Origin: Paraphysomonas bandaiensis
Taxonomy: Eukaryota > Protista > Chrysophyceae
NCBI GenBank assembly: GCA_965644295.1
Contig: CBFFRP010000377.1
Span: 62,001-126,000, forward strand
Direction: 5' to 3'
DNA: 64,000 nt
Positions 26,504 to 51,392 of the stretch are shown here, piece after piece. Made by a program: the position numbers and the translations under genes. Position 1 is the first letter of the stretch. Each line of letters starts with the position of its first letter. The notes under the pieces were generated by a model. That model had not been told where the DNA came from and ran no database searches. It saw only the letters and a program-made list of their open reading frames with translations.

Positions 26504-27178
26504 ATGGTGAAGCTTTACTACACTCCGACCTCATGTGGAGCTGCTAACTTCATTGCAGCTAAGATCGCTGGTGTTCACCTAGAAACAGAACAGGTGGATA
26601 TCTCAACCCACACGACAGCATCTGGTAAAGATTTCTACTCAATCAATCCGAAAGGGAACGTTCCTTGCCTTGTTCTTGATGATGGTACCATTCTGAACGA
26701 GAACGCTGCCACTCTGCAGTACATTGCAGACTTGGTAAGTGGTATTTTAACTTTGCAATGAGATGTTGTTTATATTTATTGACAGGGTGATAATAATATT
26801 ATTGCACCGCCGGTTGGTACTGTTGAGAGGAGCTTGGTCCAACAAGCCCTCAGCTACGTGGGTACGGAGTATCACATGACAATTGGCCACTTGTTCAATC
26901 CCAACTTGGATTCTACTGTTCGTGACTATATTCATGCTGCTGCAGACAGGAAGCTGAAGTATATGAACGATCACCTAATTGGCAACAAGTCTTTCCTCGT
27001 TGGAGACAAACTGAGCGTCGCTGACCTGTACTTGTACATTGCTCTCACATGGAGTTCCTACATCAACATTGACTTATCAAAGTTTCCCGTGGTGTTGTCC
27101 TATCGCGAGCGGATTGGAAATCTTCCAGAAATCCAGGATGCTCATGCTGCCATAGCAAGCAATCCCAGCTCCATCTAA
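26504..27178 (+). CDS. Glutathione S-transferase, beta-class-like (copy 2), 207 aa
   Basis: Same protein as copy 1; intron 26735-26785. Confidence 0.92.
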
Positions 27179-27806
27179 ACATGTCATACTAATATATATA
27201 AATACATTACTGTCTTGTTATAATGTGCAAGTGAGTATATGATATGTGGGCATTATTGTTTACATAGAACACTTTAATCTACTCATTAATTTTGAAATAA
27301 GTAACAAGAAGATTTTCTTATCCTTAATATACTGGTGGAATGAATTCCATGCATTCATGAAAGTTGAAGTTTACATAAATCTGAAGGAATTGTTTTCTAT
27401 TTAATTGCTGTATAATAAGTACTGTTTCTCGGCATTAAATGCAAATTACATTCGATAATTTGCTTTTCTATATGCATTTGAATGTCATGATGAAACTATT
27501 TATCCATTATTAAAAGATATATATTGTAGTAGCTACGTAGCTACTATATACTATATTGAATAATATGTTTTGATATGATTGTGGCCTGTTCAATGGGATG
27601 AAATTGGAACTGTTCAATTGCTGCATGATTGCTACATCAAGTGAAATCGGAACTACGGCTACCACAACATATTGTCAGTTTGTGAGAGCAGTTTCTTCCT
27701 ACCTAAATATGCGAGCGATTACAAATCCTAAGGGAAATGTTGAATATATGAAATGAAAGTACTTCCATAAATATTTGACGCGTGTTAATAACAGAGAATA
27801 TAAAAG

Positions 27807-30365
27807 TTATTTTCTAATCTCACAGGCATGATATCTACATAACGTTAATCCGTCTCTAAGTGGAATCAACACAGGACTTAGATGCGGGTGGGTAGCACAG
27901 AATGTGTTGAACTCATCCATCGCCTTTCCCAATCGACGCATTCGAAATGACTTCGGAGAAGAGTCGGCTGACGCGCTGCAACTCTTTCCCTGTGCTTCGG
28001 CCAAAACTAGTCCTTTAAATAGCGTGTTGTCAATGACTACCAAAGCCCCATCCGCTAGCATCTTTCTTCCCCCATTCTCTCCCATTAGTAGCTGTAAATA
28101 CTCCTGACAAGACCGCTTATCAGCGTCTATGAAAGCCATGTTGAAAACTCTATCACTGGAGCCTTGAATTTCTCCTAAAACATCTTTACCTCTACCTATC
28201 ACCAGGTCAATCTGGTCGTCAGATTAGTGAAAACTTTCAACATCGCTGTTGCTAGAGAGACGCACCTGCTTAGAAGTTGAGTTTTTCCAGAAATACCTCT
28301 GAGCGACCTCCGCTGCCCTACTGTCGGACTCAACAGTTAAAAGTGACCCCCCTGGGCGAAGGCCCTCCGATAGACATAACGCGGAATACCCAGTAAACGT
28401 TCCAATCTCCAGCACACTCTCTGGACTAATCATATGTGAAAGGGTTGCTAGCAGACGGCCCTGTAGATGCCCCGATAGCATGCCAGCAGCTTCTGGGAAA
28501 ACATTTGCAGTCTCCTCGCGCAAGGACTTCAAGAGTGGAGGTTCAGGAGACGACTTGCTTGCACAGTACTCCTCCATATTTACCGATGAAGTGTGAGACG
28601 GAGTTGCGAGAACAGAGAATGCTCTGCGCTGGTGTTGTTTCTGTTGCTGCCTGCGCCTTTGCTTCCGCTTGGCTCTACACAAATATTGCATGATATCACT
28701 ACGTTTTCTAACATTCCTCGCACACTTACACTTCACTACGATCATTAGCCAGATAAGGATCATTGGCTGACCGCACCGCTTCCCCATATTCCAGCCTGCA
28801 TGCCTACATATTCCGCGTAGTTAAAGGTATTGGTCAAACTAAGTAGCACTAACCTCACAACAACACCCAGAGTAAGAGAAAGCACAGTTCGGACACTGAA
28901 GGAACCTCACCTAACAATGAGGATAGAGCAGTTAGCAAAAAAGACAATCCCTCGAGATGTACGCACCGAGCACGAATTGTTGCGACAGTTGGAGAAAGTG
29001 TCGCACGGTTGACCGCAGGTCTCACAAGAAGATAAAACGTCCTCCGTTATTTTCTCACCCATTCTGTCGTCGAAAACATAGTTCGTCCCTTTGAAAGCAG
29101 ATTCTTTCGAGGAGTCCCTCTCCCTGGCATAAGATATTATTCCCCCGCGTAGTCGGCTCGTGTTGGTGAAGCCCAGCTCCTGCTCCAAGAAGGCATTGAT
29201 CTTCACACAACGAATTCCCCCGGTGCAATATGTCATAATTGGTGTGTCCTTATCCCGTCCGTGCAGTGCCTCGCGCAATGTCCTCCAACTGTCCTGAAAT
29301 CTGACAGTGTTTAGCGGGGTGGCCCCCTTAAACACACCTATATCTGATTCATAACCGTTCCTACAGTCAAATACAAGGGCATCAGGTCGTGCTATAGCCT
29401 CCTCCCACTCTTGGGGCCCCAGCTCGCGCCCTGCAGCTGACCACTCCAGGGGTGCAGACAGGCCGTCTGCAACAATCTGCTCTCGGCGACGAACATGCAA
29501 GGCTCGAAAAGGCTGGTCACGGTAGAAGTCCGGCGTAGGAATTTCACGATCTACATTCAATGACACGCCTTGAAGCAATGGTACGCATTCACAGGCACGG
29601 CTGAATGGTTCCAGTACATTGCTTGGAACAGCCATCTGCGCGTTGATACCTTCCTCGGCCACATACACCCTGCCGAGGGCTTTAAAGGGTGCCCACAAAC
29701 ATTGCAAAAGTGGCACCATATCGTCGGGCCGGTCTACCTGACGAAAAACATAGAAAGAAAGCATCGTGAATGCGGGGCTATCTAAAGGGTTCTGCATGCC
29801 CTCAAGTATGGGGCCCAATTCAGCGACAGGTGATTCCCTGGTATACATATCAGGTTGACCCTCTACAAATAGCTGCATGCAAGAAGAACTGGAATTTGAT
29901 TGCATTAATTTCTCAACAAGGTCATTATCTCCATCAAATGTTCGTGGCATAGTCATCTGGACAAGTCGAATTAAGTACGATACAGACAATATTCATCACT
30001 TACTTCATCAGGGATAATATATCTTAAAGAATACGGAATGTGCTTACAACCCGGAAAACGGCGCTCTATTTCACTCCTCAATTGTTGTACTGTAAAATTA
30101 TTCCGAGAGAAGAGAATTCTTAGTTTCGCCTTCTTATTTGGATTGTACGGCTTCAAGTACACTCTCAGACTCTTGTCTATCAACACATTGACATTGACAC
30201 CAATTAGATCACTAGAATCAGTAGAGAATGATTGGGTTTGTTCTCTTCGTGTCGTCTTTAGATATCCCGCTCCCTGAACAACCACACGTCACTGCGCTCT
30301 AACCATACCACACATAACTCCACCTGCTGTTTGACCAAGCGTCTAATGAAGGACAATCTGACCAT
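27807..30365 (-). CDS. TrhO/UPF0176 rhodanese-domain tRNA U34 hydroxylase fused to a family-3 (CCoAOMT/TrmR-like) O-methyltransferase
   Basis: GRVYVAEEGINAQ, DCRNGYESDIGVF, YCTGGIRCVK, LRGGI, FVFDDR-like YVFDDR, Cys-rich tail; then LEIGTFTGYSALCL, FIDADK, DNTLFKG, PLRDGLTL. Six GT-AG introns keep one frame. Confidence 0.82.
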
Positions 30366-30841
30366 CTGTGAACAGAACACTTCTACCTATGCTACTTCTA
30401 TTGCTCTTGTTGAGGCTAAGCGTGAAGATGGCTGACATGGACTGACAAACTACGCACTGTGCTGTGCTGTATATGGTGCTACCACTGGACTACACTCACA
30501 AAGACTCGACCTGACATCCCCACCATCCATTAGAAATTAAAGAGATGTGATTGGCTGCATAGGTACTGGTGATGGTGGCTGACAGATACAGTGCTATACG
30601 GCGGTATAACACACACAGCGAAGATGGGATCCACAATCATGTTTGGTGTTGGATTGGAGCGGAAGAATGATCCGATGAGTTACCTCCTGCACACCCGCAC
30701 TTCGAAGTTATCTGAAAGTGAAAGTGAGATAAGTGAATGTGTGATGAGGGGCGGTGGGGTGCGCTTATATATCAACTCATAACATCATATAGATGGCCAC
30801 ACATAACACTTATGCATGTACTGAGGATCTAGGACGACAGC

Positions 30842-48868: not shown

Positions 48869-49961
48869 TTATTTATCGGATCCGATTCCAAGCAATAGGT
48901 TACTTCCACTAGATCCAGAACCAGAGCCGTTATTCCCTGGGATGTATGTCACGTTGCGGGCTCTACCCACGACACCGGCAACCTCCTTCGCAGTGTCGAT
49001 ACGACGGAGCTCAATGATTCCATTACCCGCCTTTGCAATTGCATTCGAGATCAATGTAGCGGCCTATATATAGATTTAAAAATACTTTTAAGAAACGCTT
49101 TCCTCACCTCCGCTTCTCCCTCGGCGCGAATAACAGCTGCCTTCCGCTCCTGGTCGGATTTGGCCACAACCCAGCTCTGGCGCTCGGCTTCTTGCTGCGC
49201 CACCTGTTTATGCTCAATCGCCTTCGCAAATTCACGTCCGAATGTGAGATGGGTGATGCTAACGTCATCCAGAATGAGATGGAAATGTGCAGCTCGCTTA
49301 ATGAGGTCCCTTCTGATCTGCTGGGATATTATGGCTCTTTTAGACAAAAGCTCCTCCGCATTGTACTGTGCGACAACCGCCTTCAGAACCTCGTTTCCTA
49401 ATATATGTAAGATCGATCCGACAACCATGACATAAAATAATTACCGAGGGATGGAAGAACACGGTCATCAAAGTCAACTCCTAGCGTCTTATATATTTCA
49501 GGAAGATCCTCCTCCTGTGGTCTTGACAGCACTCTCAAAGAGATGTTTACCTACAATGAGTTCTAAGGCATAGCTAGATAGGACATAAATATGATTACCA
49601 TTTGCAGATCTTTAGTTCCAGTTGAGGAATGGATAGATCTTGGACGTGCTCTGATGTCCATAATGATTGGTTCCTACGAAAAATGTAATGGAAAAAACTT
49701 CAATTATGTGTCACTGCACCTGGAGAAAAGGAATACGGACGTGAGTCCCCTCACCAACAACTTGCTTCTGGATTCCACTGATTTTATCAAAAATAACAGC
49801 CCTTCTACCTCCATCAACTAAGAGCAACACAACAAACAAAAATTACACCACTGCAAAACAACACACAGCTCCCTACCATCATAAAGACAGAGCTCAGAAA
49901 CCACCCCTGCGGCAACAGCCAGTGAGCCAGCACGTGTAGCGAACTTGATTAAAGGTTCCAT
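48869..49961 (-). CDS. PHB1: Prohibitin (PHB1-like)
   Basis: [51 protein letters not shown]; several introns. Confidence 0.93.
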
Positions 49962-50294
49962 CGATGCTATTATGAGGGTTATGTATCAGTGGACTAAACT
50001 ATACTTGACTGAAGGAAACGGAGTGACTGAGACATGCACAATACTTGTGGCACAGAACAGCCAGAACTAAAACATCTAGACAACACACACAAAAAAAAGT
50101 ACAGGTACGGGTACAGAAGTACGTCGTACGTATATACATACCTACTGTACCTACCTACAGAGCTATGACATAAATACAGCGGTACATACATTTTATACGT
50201 AGCTACATATACATATACAAGCATTTGCATGCATATCTTGCAGCCGCATGATGCACTTCTTCAGGTAGATGCATGGTATAGTCTGCGGGGAGTG

Positions 50295-51392
50295 ATGCAT
50301 AGATATTCCGTGTATTTAGTAATATGTATGCTCTATTTCTCGTCTGGGGGTTTAGTGTCAGAGGTTGGTGTTGATGGGGGGGGGTTGTCTGCTGAGGGTA
50401 TGCCCTCTATAGGCCGGGCAGTGTATAATTTGGTTGATATAGAAGGGTATGTTCCACGTAGATGTAATGTGGATGATCGCATATGCATCATCATGGATAC
50501 TCTTTACTCTGTTATTGATGCGATGCCATCTAGTGGCTCCGACTATCAGTCTAATGCTTGTGAGTTCTCAACTGCGCTTTCGAATTACTTCTGTGGGGTG
50601 GAGCAACTGTGGATGGTACTGGACAGGATGATGGAGAAACACGGCCCTCACTCGTATATGTATGGCTATATTCGAAAGGTACAGTTAGCTAAAATGCTCG
50701 AAGCTATCGATAACCTGCAGGCGTCGACTTACTGCGAGGTTGGAATGAATGGTGGTCACTCGGCAGCTGCAATTCTTTCTGCGCGAGACGATATAAAGGT
50801 TTATTCCTTTGACATTGCTGCTTTTGGATACAGCAGGCCAATAGCAGAACTACTAGATACAGTGTTTCCGGGTAGGTTTACTGCTATATTTGGACCCTCT
50901 GCAGAGACAGCGCCAGACTACATTCGACAGCATCTCGAAAATAAGTGCGACATCATATTCATTGATGGAAGTCATGCGGAAGACGATGCACTTGTTGATA
51001 TTGTTAATTTTGCAAAGGCAGCATCGCCTCAACATGCACTGTTTTTAGATGACACACCATGCTTGGACTGGGAGTGCTACCTCGGCTCTTTCCGCTCGCA
51101 GTGGTGTCGATACTCTAGTGTACTTCATTTGCCAGTTGCAGTACGATATGTGATAAAGCACTTGGCTACATTATCATTGTTGCGAGATGTGGAATTTTTT
51201 GATTATGAATGTGGTCACCCTTGCAACGACCCTGTTCAAGTTGACTCATCCACCCACAGAATGGTGTGGGGCTGGGCCAGTGCAAAGTACAACTTGAATA
51301 ATCGCAATATGTGTGATGGAGATTCCATGCATCAATGCTCCTCTAGAAATAAAATATCACCTCATTTTCTTTTCTGGGAACATGAGCTCTAA
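50295..51392 (+). CDS. Secreted/membrane-anchored class I SAM methyltransferase (Methyltransf_24-like)
   Basis: EVGMNGGHSA, YSFD, CDIIFIDGSH, LFLDD motifs; hydrophobic N-terminus; alternative start at 50229. Confidence 0.75.
   Translation: MHRYSVYLVICMLYFSSGGLVSEVGVDGGGLSAEGMPSIGRAVYNLVDIEGYVPRRCNVDDRICIIMDTLYSVIDAMPSSGSDYQSNACEFSTALSNYFCGVEQLWMVLDRMMEKHGPHSYMYGYIRKVQLAKMLEAIDNLQASTYCEVGMNGGHSAAAILSARDDIKVYSFDIAAFGYSRPIAELLDTVFPGRFTAIFGPSAETAPDYIRQHLENKCDIIFIDGSHAEDDALVDIVNFAKAASPQHALFLDDTPCLDWECYLGSFRSQWCRYSSVLHLPVAVRYVIKHLATLSLLRDVEFFDYECGHPCNDPVQVDSSTHRMVWGWASAKYNLNNRNMCDGDSMHQCSSRNKISPHFLFWEHEL

What the first reader, a model, noticed from the sequence alone, without database searches (positions are those of the whole stretch)
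27807..30365. TrhO tRNA hydroxylase fused to an O-methyltransferase: possible single-polypeptide mo5U34 pathway in a eukaryotic organelle
Seen: canonical splicing joins a complete TrhO/YceA-type module (YCTGGIRC rhodanese loop, Cys-rich tail) in frame to a family-3 SAM O-methyltransferase. The N-terminus MVRLSFIRRLVKQQ looks like a mitochondrial presequence. Established: bacterial TrhO makes 5-hydroxyuridine at tRNA position 34, and in Bacillus the family-3 OMT TrmR methylates it to 5-methoxyuridine. xo5U wobble modifications are chiefly known from bacteria. Inference: this is a Rosetta-stone fusion of two consecutive steps, predicting mo5U34 in organellar tRNAs. Caveat: the OMT motifs (EIGTFTGYS) are CCoAOMT-like rather than diagnostic of TrmR.
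Basis: partly seen in the sequence, partly recalled or inferred. Interest (0 to 1): 0.82.

Follow-up and report, generated by a model that had tools for sequence, protein, structure and literature searches.

The report
TrhO–O-methyltransferase fusion gene, already reported
This is a real, spliced and expressed gene of a non-photosynthetic marine protist that joins a tRNA uridine hydroxylase (TrhO) to an O-methyltransferase in one protein, but the same fusion in related organisms was already published in 2019 as the clue that led to TrhO, so it is one more member of a known and still untested family.

Summary
A minus-strand gene of seven exons (30365 to 27807) has six GT-AG introns of 47-56 nt and encodes 748 codons. 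One transcript contig lacks all six introns. A second crosses the 55-nt intron that joins TrhO to the methyltransferase and ends in a poly(A) tail.

The hydroxylase part passes NCBI's TrhO equivalog cut-off and keeps the CTGGIR loop. The methyltransferase is Pfam Methyltransf_3.

The fusion is not new. Sakai et al. 2019 (PMC6599085) used a yceA-trmR fusion in Phytophthora sojae, P. ramorum and Phaeodactylum to find TrhO, while calling these organisms bacteria. More than 80 collinear homologues exist in chrysophytes, diatoms, brown algae, Triparma, Vitrella and Porphyridium.

The methyltransferase is not a close TrmR orthologue, so the mo5U product rests on the fusion logic. The genome lacks photosystem, light-harvesting, CmoB and peptidase-U32 genes. 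Its mitochondrial DNA encodes five sole family-box tRNAs with the anticodon-loop pattern TrmR accepts, which makes mitochondrial tRNA the likeliest substrate. Neither localisation nor product was tested.

I saw no note of it on other DNA. Interest is low to moderate.

The parts
30366..30410 (-). 5' untranslated region present in the cDNA contigs, with an in-frame stop (30389-30387) upstream of the ATG
   Evidence: X1 record 1 and X2 record 5 both begin their match at 30410.
30324..30365 (-). Exon 1: start codon and 14 residues (MVRLSFIRRLVKQQ), a basic presequence-like N-terminus
   Evidence: It has 4 K/R and no D/E, and no hydrophobic run longer than 2, so it is not a signal peptide.
30274..30323 (-). 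Intron 1 (50 nt, GT-AG)
   Evidence: Joint 30272|30323 (cut +1) in X1, X2 and X4.
30004..30273 (-). Exon 2: end of the presequence-like stretch, then a conserved N-terminal domain of about 70 residues with unknown fold
   Evidence: Alignment A1 with 19 homologues. No Pfam or NCBIfam family. AlphaFold pLDDT 66 with a beta-alpha-beta-alpha-beta order. No PDB fold match. This is its only copy in the genome.
29957..30003 (-). Intron 2 (47 nt, GTAAGT...AG)
   Evidence: Joint 29956|30004 in X1 and X2.
28967..29956 (-). Exon 3: TrhO core (UPF0176_N, Rhodanese with the YCTGGIRC loop, start of Rhodanese_C)
   Evidence: Pfam. NCBIfam NF001133 TrhO equivalog, 181.8 bits against a cut-off of 170. PDB 9j5o, tRNA uridine(34) hydroxylase, 1.6e-28.
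28911..28966 (-). Intron 3 (56 nt, GT-AG)
   Evidence: Joint 28907|28964 (cut +3) in X1 and X2.
28854..28910 (-). Exon 4: 19 residues that continue the Cys-rich Rhodanese_C tail (QCPNC...GCCCE)
   Evidence: Homologues conserve it at 44-76% identity.
28804..28853 (-). Intron 4 (50 nt, GT-AG)
   Evidence: Joint 28802|28853 (cut +1) in X1 and X2.
28730..28803 (-). Exon 5: last Cys of the TrhO tail and the start of the linker; it ends in phase 2
28675..28729 (-). Intron 5 (55 nt, GTAAGT...AG), the junction intron. If it were retained, a TAA at 28728-28726 would end a stand-alone TrhO.
   Evidence: Joint 28674|28730 with no ambiguity in X1 (2342-nt contig) and X2 (1422-nt contig with a poly(A) tail).
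28266..28674 (-). Exon 6: basic linker (11 K/R in 32 residues), then the N half of the Methyltransf_3 domain (SAM motif LEIGTFTGYS)
   Evidence: Pfam 1.9e-15. PDB 3tr6 1.2e-14 and 2avd 8e-12. Linker composition.
28212..28265 (-). Intron 6 (54 nt, GT-AG) inside the methyltransferase domain
   Evidence: Joint 28211|28266 in X1, X2, X4 and X9.
27807..28211 (-). Exon 7: C half of the Methyltransf_3 domain (FIDADK, IDNTLFKG, arginine loop PKSFRMRRL) and the TAA stop
   Evidence: Pfam 2.1e-13. The best PDB match is B. subtilis YrrM/TrmR, 5zw3, at 8e-7.
27768..27806 (-). 3' untranslated region and poly(A) site
   Evidence: X2 record 4 ends at 27768 with a T21 loose end.

Best explanation
This is one nuclear gene of a non-photosynthetic, chrysophyte-like marine protist. 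It encodes a single 748-residue protein with five parts in order. These are a short basic presequence-like N-terminus, a conserved domain of about 70 residues with unknown fold, a complete TrhO-type oxygen-dependent tRNA uridine-34 hydroxylase, a basic linker, and a cation-dependent family-3 SAM O-methyltransferase. It is an orthologue of the stramenopile TrhO-'TrmR' fusion that Sakai et al. noted in 2019.

Shown here: the gene structure, the single spliced polyadenylated mRNA, the domain identities, the intact catalytic motifs, and conservation of the same domain order in more than 80 homologues.

Inferred: the hydroxylase domain converts U34 to ho5U34 in tRNAs that read four-codon boxes, and the tethered methyltransferase converts ho5U34 to mo5U34. 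This is the Bacillus-type route with both enzymes in one chain.

Inferred more weakly: in this organism the substrates are the mitochondrial tRNAs Pro-UGG, Ser-UGA, Ala-UGC, Val-UAC and Leu-UAG.

The confidence given (0.6) is for the whole statement including the mo5U34 product. The gene structure and family assignment alone I would put above 0.95, and the mitochondrial compartment at about 0.45.
For: Structure and expression: with all six introns removed in one contig and a poly(A) tail on another.

TrhO identity: NF001133 at 181.8 bits against a cut-off of 170, and PDB 9j5o at 1.6e-28 with CTGGIRC aligned. Sakai et al. showed that C200, T201, G203 and R205 of this loop are essential.

Methyltransferase: Pfam PF01596 in both halves. 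The SAM motif, DADK and DN metal/catalytic motifs are kept.

TrmR loop: an arginine equivalent to TrmR R178 is kept in at least 80% of fusion homologues, and the window reads RMRRL where TrmR reads RRRRL. Ryu et al. name R178 as TrmR-specific.

Fusion family: Sakai et al. describe the yceA-trmR fusion in two Phytophthora species and Phaeodactylum. There are 432 homologues at E<=1e-20, and most of the best 120 carry all four Pfam domains. They are collinear with the window's exons. The fused methyltransferase domains form one group against the 48 nearest bacterial ones, with SH-aLRT 96.9.

Pathway context in this genome: no CmoB and no peptidase U32/TrhP, so TrhO followed by this methyltransferase is the only recognisable xo5U route.

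Substrates: no Photo_RC or light-harvesting genes. The 61.6-kb mitochondrial contig encodes Pro-UGG, Ser-UGA, Ala-UGC, Val-UAC and Leu-UAG as the only tRNAs for their boxes. All five have Py32-U33-U34-Pu35, the pattern Ryu et al. give for TrmR substrates.
Against: No modification or enzyme activity was measured.

The methyltransferase is not a close TrmR relative. The fusion-domain profile scores 94.5 and 90.8 bits against the TrmR structures, compared with 171 against Coxiella 3tr6 and 119 against CCoAOMT. TrmR residues R86 and R90 could not be mapped.

None of the 80 nearest bacterial methyltransferases has a trhO gene within 4 kb.

Mitochondria are generally held to use unmodified U34 in family boxes, and xo5U was not found in Chlamydomonas by mass spectrometry, according to a chloroplast tRNA review.

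The N-terminus gave no amphipathic signal above shuffled controls in a crude test. No targeting predictor was available.

Several orthologues have signal-peptide-like N-termini that suggest plastid targeting in photosynthetic relatives, so the compartment may differ between lineages.

The genome has four further TrhO-like loci, so TrhO-type proteins here need not all serve one substrate.
Confidence: 0.6

Rival explanations
1. There are two adjacent same-strand genes, a TrhO ending at the TAA inside 'intron 5' and a methyltransferase starting at the ATG at 28577. On this view the fused reading is an artefact of gene modelling or transcript assembly.
For: If intron 5 is retained, a TAA (28728-28726) closes the TrhO frame. 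The methyltransferase has an internal Met (MEEY...) at about the point where stand-alone family-3 enzymes begin. Assembled contigs cannot exclude minor isoforms.
Against: Two independent transcript assemblies carry the exact 28674|28730 joint inside long contigs that continue into both domains. No contig covers the intron. The splice restores the frame precisely. More than 80 homologues from many lineages have both domains in one protein in the same order.
Confidence: 0.03
2. The fusion is real, but the methyltransferase acts on something other than ho5U34 of tRNA. Candidates are another hydroxylated base or RNA made by the TrhO-like domain, or a small catechol-like molecule.
For: The methyltransferase is nearest to generic bacterial and animal catechol-type family-3 enzymes (3tr6, 2hnk, 3cbg, 2avd), not to TrmR. 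The protein-feature search returned only generic O-methyltransferase clusters. The nearest bacterial relatives have no trhO neighbour. This genome has five TrhO-like loci, which hints at varied substrates.
Against: A covalent link to a TrhO that passes the equivalog cut-off and keeps every tested catalytic residue is hard to explain unless the two domains share a substrate. The basic loop aligned with TrmR's tRNA-binding loop is conserved. The only product of TrhO reported in the papers read here is ho5U34.
Confidence: 0.2
3. The enzyme makes mo5U34, but on cytosolic tRNAs rather than organellar ones.
For: The N-terminal stretch is short, and the crude amphipathicity test gave no support. Some homologue models (P0130, P0132, Vitrella P0154) have almost no N-terminal extension. 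Sakai et al. only suggest 'an xo5U-type modification in eukaryotes', without naming a compartment.
Against: The first 24 residues have 7 K/R and no acidic residue, which is typical of a presequence. Many orthologues have long N-terminal extensions, some like signal peptides. From my own knowledge, eukaryotic cytosolic U34 in family boxes is handled by the Elongator-type xm5U system. The mitochondrial tRNA set fits the substrate pattern.
Confidence: 0.15
4. The protein is imported as a polyprotein and cut in the linker by the mitochondrial processing peptidase, releasing a separate TrhO and methyltransferase.
For: The linker is Arg/Lys/Gln-rich and contains R-A-F-S, which resembles an R-3 cleavage pattern.
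Against: The pattern is not conserved in the linkers of 40 homologues, which instead share a different short motif. There is no experimental support.
Confidence: 0.08

Closest known systems
Stramenopile YceA(TrhO)-TrmR fusion proteins of Phytophthora sojae, P. ramorum and Phaeodactylum tricornutum (Sakai et al. 2019, Nat Commun 10:2858, Fig. 3b)
   Same: One polypeptide with the TrhO domains followed by a Methyltransf_3 domain. The window's exons are collinear with diatom, chrysophyte, brown-alga, Triparma, Vitrella and Porphyridium homologues.
   Different: This copy comes from a non-photosynthetic chrysophyte-like protist. The paper gives no sequence analysis, localisation or activity for the fusions and calls the hosts bacterial species. 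I did not retrieve the three named proteins themselves.
Bacterial TrhO (E. coli YceA, B. subtilis YbfQ; PDB 9j5o, 4f67)
   Same: UPF0176_N + Rhodanese + Rhodanese_C architecture. CTGGIR active-site loop. Basic strand before the rhodanese domain. Cys-rich C-terminal tail.
   Different: It is fused to a methyltransferase, preceded by an extra domain of about 70 residues and a presequence-like stretch, split by introns and encoded in a eukaryotic nucleus.
TrmR (B. subtilis YrrM; PDB 5zw3/5zw4, 8k1f), the tRNA ho5U34 methyltransferase
   Same: The same Pfam family (PF01596), SAM and metal-site motifs. The C half of the window's domain matches TrmR best (8e-7). An arginine-rich loop aligns with TrmR's tRNA-binding loop (R178, R181).
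   Different: Overall it is more similar to generic family-3 O-methyltransferases (3tr6, 2hnk, 3cbg) and to CCoAOMT than to TrmR. Ryu et al. find TrmR's close relatives only in Firmicutes. R86 and R90 were not mapped.
Human TSTD2 and other stand-alone eukaryotic TrhO homologues
   Same: A eukaryotic nuclear gene with the TrhO architecture and no reported function.
   Different: TSTD2 has no methyltransferase domain. This genome also has four stand-alone TrhO-like loci.

Membership tests
TrhO (oxygen-dependent tRNA uridine(34) hydroxylase) | Domain architecture UPF0176_N + Rhodanese + Rhodanese_C | tested here: met
   Pfam: 3.2e-16, 3.2e-9 and 2e-12, all above the gathering scores.
TrhO (oxygen-dependent tRNA uridine(34) hydroxylase) | Score above NCBI's equivalog cut-off (NF001133) | tested here: met
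   181.8 bits against a cut-off of 170, for exon 3 alone.
TrhO (oxygen-dependent tRNA uridine(34) hydroxylase) | CXGGXR active-site loop with the essential C200, T201, G203 and R205 (E. coli numbering) | tested here: met
   The window reads YCTGGIRC, aligned with CTGGVRC of 9j5o and CTGGIRC of 4f67. Essentiality is from Sakai et al..
TrhO (oxygen-dependent tRNA uridine(34) hydroxylase) | Basic residues on the beta-sheet next to the loop (K112, R114) | tested here: inconclusive
   The window has HVRRRE where 9j5o has FVRHKKE. I did not make an exact mapping to E. coli numbering.
TrhO (oxygen-dependent tRNA uridine(34) hydroxylase) | Forms ho5U34 on tRNA with O2 | not testable with these tools
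   This needs a complementation or in vitro assay.
TrmR (tRNA 5-hydroxyuridine methyltransferase) | Cation-dependent family-3 O-methyltransferase fold with SAM and metal-site motifs | tested here: met
   PF01596 in both halves. LEIGTFTGYS, FIDADK and IDN are conserved.
TrmR (tRNA 5-hydroxyuridine methyltransferase) | Belongs to the TrmR sequence neighbourhood (Ryu et al.: above about 40% identity, Firmicutes only) | tested here: not met
   The fusion-domain profile scores 94.5 bits (5zw3) and 90.8 (8k1f), against 171 (3tr6) and 119 (CCoAOMT 1sui). The N half alone gives 5e-5 against 8k1f, and 5zw3 is not listed at E<=0.01.
TrmR (tRNA 5-hydroxyuridine methyltransferase) | TrmR-specific tRNA-binding arginines R86, R90 and R178 (plus R181) | tested here: inconclusive
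   Equivalents of R178 and R181 are present (RMRRL against RRRRL). The R178 equivalent is kept in at least 80% of fusion homologues. R86 and R90 could not be mapped, because no TrmR sequence could be brought into an alignment.
TrmR (tRNA 5-hydroxyuridine methyltransferase) | Methylates ho5U34-tRNA | not testable with these tools
   This needs an enzyme assay or complementation of a cmoB mutant, as in Ryu et al..
Eukaryotic TrhO-O-methyltransferase fusion family (Sakai et al. 2019) | TrhO and Methyltransf_3 in one reading frame, in that order, on one mRNA | tested here: met
   Spliced contigs and frame arithmetic.
Eukaryotic TrhO-O-methyltransferase fusion family (Sakai et al. 2019) | Homology of both halves to the fusions of other stramenopiles | tested here: met
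   Exon 3 is 37-58% identical and exons 6 and 7 are 26-58% identical to collinear proteins of diatoms, chrysophytes, Triparma and others. The fused methyltransferase domains form one group in a quick tree.

The most novel reading that the evidence does not exclude
In this plastid-gene-free heterotroph, the fusion enzyme installs mo5U34 on the five mitochondrial tRNAs that each read a whole four-codon box alone. That would be the first xo5U-type wobble modification shown in a mitochondrion, or in any eukaryote. It would go against the common view that mitochondria read family boxes with unmodified U34. The conserved N-terminal domain of about 70 residues would then be a eukaryote-specific accessory module for RNA or partner binding.
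Probability: 0.3. Interest if true: 0.6.

Novelty: new member of a known kind. Interest (0 to 1): 0.3.

Why it matters
Whether eukaryotes carry xo5U-type wobble modifications is an open question that Sakai et al. raised. No paper I found reports ho5U or mo5U at position 34 of a eukaryotic organellar tRNA. The fusion family is the strongest genomic hint that such a pathway exists in red-lineage algae, stramenopiles and chromerids.

This copy adds one useful point. It sits in an organism without photosynthesis genes, CmoB or TrhP, so the likely substrates narrow to five mitochondrial tRNAs that can be purified and tested by mass spectrometry. The same test can be run in the model diatom Phaeodactylum, so this window is not needed to pose the question.

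Tried and rejected

**TrmR model.** NCBIfam returned no methyltransferase-family match for four homologous fusion proteins, which suggests it has no TrmR model, so an equivalog test was not possible.

**TrmR reference sequence.** I could not bring a TrmR sequence into an alignment, because PDB hits are not stored as proteins. R86 and R90 therefore stayed unmapped, and TrmR is missing from the tree.

**Synteny.** The 80 nearest bacterial methyltransferases showed no trhO within 4 kb, so this gave no functional link.

**N-terminal domain.** There was no Pfam hit; the best was PB1 at E 0.08 in one member. The AlphaFold model had pLDDT of only 66. Foldseek against the PDB gave nothing below E 3.8. 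The fold is left open.

**Amphipathic helix in exon 1.** The hydrophobic moment was 0.32 against a shuffled mean of 0.39. This gives no support, and no real targeting predictor was available.

**Linker as a processing-peptidase site.** The R-A-F-S pattern is not conserved in homologues, so I rejected it as a main reading.

**Protein-feature search.** It returned only generic TrhO and O-methyltransferase clusters.

**The large all-protein search.** I did not use it, because the claim does not rest on an absence of relatives.
Full report
**What is there.** The finding lies on the minus strand. Pfam places UPF0176_N, Rhodanese and Rhodanese_C in the long reading frame 28907-29989. It places the two halves of Methyltransf_3 (profile positions 2-101 and 103-202) in the frames 28224-28787 and 27807-28202.

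Reading the minus strand gives seven exons:
- E1 30365-30324
- E2 30273-30004
- E3 29956-28967
- E4 28910-28854
- E5 28803-28730
- E6 28674-28266
- E7 28211-27810, with the stop at 27809-27807

The six introns are 50, 47, 56, 50, 55 and 54 nt long and all are GT-AG. Each exon lies in an open frame and the phases match. E5 ends two bases into a codon and E6 supplies the third base, giving GTA (Val). The total is 748 codons. Exons were searched separately by reference.

**Is the fusion real?** The critical element is the 55-nt intron 28729-28675. If it stayed in the mRNA, a TAA at 28728-28726 would end a stand-alone TrhO, and the methyltransferase could start at an internal ATG (28577).

Public runs settle this:
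- Three runs of the same organism hold 0.75-0.77 of the sampled words, which is the exonic share. Three others hold 0.99 and are probably the genome data.
- In run X1, one 2342-nt contig covers 30410 to 27779 with all six introns removed exactly at the predicted borders.
- In run X2, a 1422-nt contig runs from the TrhO core (29383) across the 28674|28730 joint to 27768. It ends in a run of 21 T on the plus strand, which is a poly(A) tail.
- No contig in X1 or X2 covers the junction intron.
- A poly(A) marine metatranscriptome (X4) has pieces at 99% identity or more with two of the joints, so the gene is expressed in the sea.

An in-frame stop at 30389-30387 inside the transcribed leader fixes the ATG at 30365 as the start. 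Contigs cannot exclude rare isoforms.

**The hydroxylase half.** Exon 3 alone scores 181.8 bits on NCBI's TrhO equivalog model, whose cut-off is 170. It matches the solved tRNA uridine(34) hydroxylase 9j5o at 1.6e-28. The active-site loop reads YCTGGIRC. Sakai et al. showed that C200, T201, G203 and R205 of this CTGGIR loop are essential in E. coli. Exons 4 and 5 continue the Cys-rich Rhodanese_C tail and are conserved in homologues.

**The methyltransferase half.** It belongs to Pfam PF01596 and keeps the SAM motif, FIDADK and the DN pair.

- The N half is closest to a Coxiella O-methyltransferase (3tr6, 1e-14) and human COMTD1 (2avd). One TrmR structure (8k1f) reaches only 5e-5.
- The C half matches B. 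subtilis YrrM/TrmR best, at 8e-7.
- A profile of twelve fused methyltransferase domains scores 171 bits on 3tr6, about 152 on 2hnk and 3cbg, and 119 on plant CCoAOMT. It scores 94.5 and 90.8 on the two TrmR structures.

So this is not a member of the Firmicute TrmR neighbourhood that Ryu et al. describe. In its favour, the loop that orders on tRNA binding in TrmR (R178-R181, RRRRL) aligns with RMRRL in the window. The R178 equivalent is kept in at least 80% of the fusion homologues. R86 and R90 could not be mapped.

The 80 nearest bacterial methyltransferases are 31-43% identical and come mostly from Bacteroidota, Nitrospirota, Actinomycetota and Sorangium. None has a trhO gene within 4 kb. 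The claim that the product is mo5U therefore rests mainly on the fusion itself.

**It is already known.** Sakai et al. [quoted passage not shown] These are stramenopile eukaryotes, not bacteria. The paper's discussion adds that eukaryotic trhO homologues suggest 'the presence of an xo5U-type modification in eukaryotes'. In the library I searched, no other paper mentions the fusion.

**The family is large.** A word search with exon 3 already found proteins that carry both domain sets, some named by JGI 'predicted sulfurtransferase/predicted O-methyltransferase YrrM'. A search with one full-length homologue gave 432 proteins at E<=1e-20. Most of the best 120 are 700-1000 residues long and carry all four Pfam domains.

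Named sources are Ochromonadaceae CCMP2298, Ochromonas, Ectocarpus, Phaeothamnion, two Triparma species, the diatoms Cylindrotheca, Fistulifera, Cyclotella, Stephanocyclus and Amphora, the chromerid Vitrella and the red alga Porphyridium. Chaetoceros appeared.

All are collinear with the window's exons. In a quick maximum-likelihood tree, 80 fused methyltransferase domains form one side of a branch against the 48 closest bacterial ones, with SH-aLRT 96.9. The tree is unrooted, the careful search did not finish, and TrmR is not included. The result is consistent with one old fusion event.

**Extra N-terminal domain.** Exon 2 encodes a domain of about 70 residues. Its consensus is roughly NIYVD..IR.HL.M.N..RKAR......LR..IE.R...L..QPYVLRY, conserved in 19 aligned homologues. 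A profile of it detects 74 of the 206 collected proteins, weakly including Triparma and Amphora. It has no Pfam or NCBIfam family. It occurs only once in this genome. The AlphaFold model is only moderately confident (pLDDT 66, beta-alpha-beta-alpha-beta) and has no PDB fold match. Its role is unknown.

**Which compartment and which substrates?** The 62.6-Mb assembly has no Photo_RC (psbA/psbD) match and no light-harvesting protein match. This agrees with earlier notes that call the organism a non-photosynthetic chrysophyte, Paraphysomonas. It also lacks CmoB and peptidase U32/TrhP. The only recognisable xo5U route is therefore TrhO followed by this methyltransferase.

The mitochondrial genome is present as a 61.6-kb contig. 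It encodes Pro-UGG, Ser-UGA, Ala-UGC, Val-UAC and Leu-UAG as the only tRNAs for their four-codon boxes. All five have Py32-U33-U34-Pu35, the pattern that Ryu et al. describe for TrmR substrates.

The protein's first 24 residues hold seven K/R and no acidic residue, and have no hydrophobic run longer than two. This looks like a mitochondrial presequence and not like a signal peptide. A crude hydrophobic-moment test was not above shuffled controls, and I had no targeting predictor.

Several orthologues from photosynthetic lineages start with signal-peptide-like stretches, so they may go to the plastid. According to Sakai et al., the plastid-free oomycetes also carry the fusion. Mitochondrial tRNA is thus the most economical substrate here, but this is inference. 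A chloroplast tRNA review reports that xo5U was not found in Chlamydomonas by mass spectrometry and lists unmodified U34 for mitochondria.

**Linker.** The 32 residues between the domains are rich in K, R and Q and contain R-A-F-S, which resembles a processing-peptidase site. Forty homologues do not conserve this pattern, so I give post-import cleavage a low probability.

**Verdict.** However, the fusion is a published Rosetta-stone case and a widespread family, so this is a new member of a known kind. What is still missing everywhere is the experiment: nobody has shown ho5U or mo5U in a eukaryotic organellar tRNA, or any activity for one of these fusions. I rate interest at 0.3.

Noticed in passing
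G000 contigs C240:2213-2488, C396:15009-15290, C147:74589-74876, C91:95405-95542 (loci L003, L004, L006, L007): There are four further UPF0176_N/TrhO-like loci in the same genome. They are 27-33% identical to the window's TrhO, and some keep the CTGGIRC or CTGGVR loop. None lies on the contig of the only other Methyltransf_3 gene. This is an unusually large TrhO family for one organism.
   Followed up: partly
G000 C287:10969-11415 (L002): The second and only other Methyltransf_3 gene of the genome (50 bits). It is stand-alone and is not on any contig that carries a TrhO-like locus.
   Followed up: no
G000 whole genome: There are no matches to Photo_RC (psbA/D), Chloroa_b-bind (light-harvesting proteins), Methyltransf_9 (CmoB) or Peptidase_U32 (TrhP). 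The organism looks non-photosynthetic, and the assembly contains no plastid photosystem genes.
   Followed up: partly
G000 C669 (61,647 bases; L008-L014): This is the mitochondrial genome contig (cox1 at 49607-50944) with 23 tRNA genes in three clusters. No tRNA-Thr or tRNA-Gly was found. ARAGORN also calls an odd tRNA-Ile with anticodon AAT at L011:5555-5632.
   Followed up: partly
window 30411-30500 and the 5' ends of the cDNA contigs: The two transcript contigs carry 22 and 44 extra 5' letters that do not lie next to 30410 on the genome. They could be an upstream non-coding exon, a leader or adaptor remains. The coding start is not affected, because an in-frame stop lies at 30389-30387.
   Followed up: no
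window 26834-27178 (+): A glutathione-S-transferase C-terminal-like reading frame lies just beyond the 3' end of the fusion gene, on the opposite strand, so the two genes converge.
   Followed up: no
linkers of homologues P0123-P0145: Many fusion homologues share a short linker motif of the type A-M-(L/T/I)-(P/S)-R between the TrhO tail and the methyltransferase. The window's linker lacks it.
   Followed up: no
PMC6599085, Results and Fig. 3b legend: The paper that reports the fusion calls Phytophthora sojae, P. ramorum and Phaeodactylum tricornutum 'bacterial species'. This may explain why the eukaryotic nature of the fusion has gone unremarked.
   Followed up: yes
run X9 (organism B), pieces at window 27884-28569 and 29042-29301: A differently labelled organism from the same study holds pieces of this gene at 99% identity or more, including the 28211|28266 splice. 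It is either a very close relative or cross-contamination between cultures.
   Followed up: no
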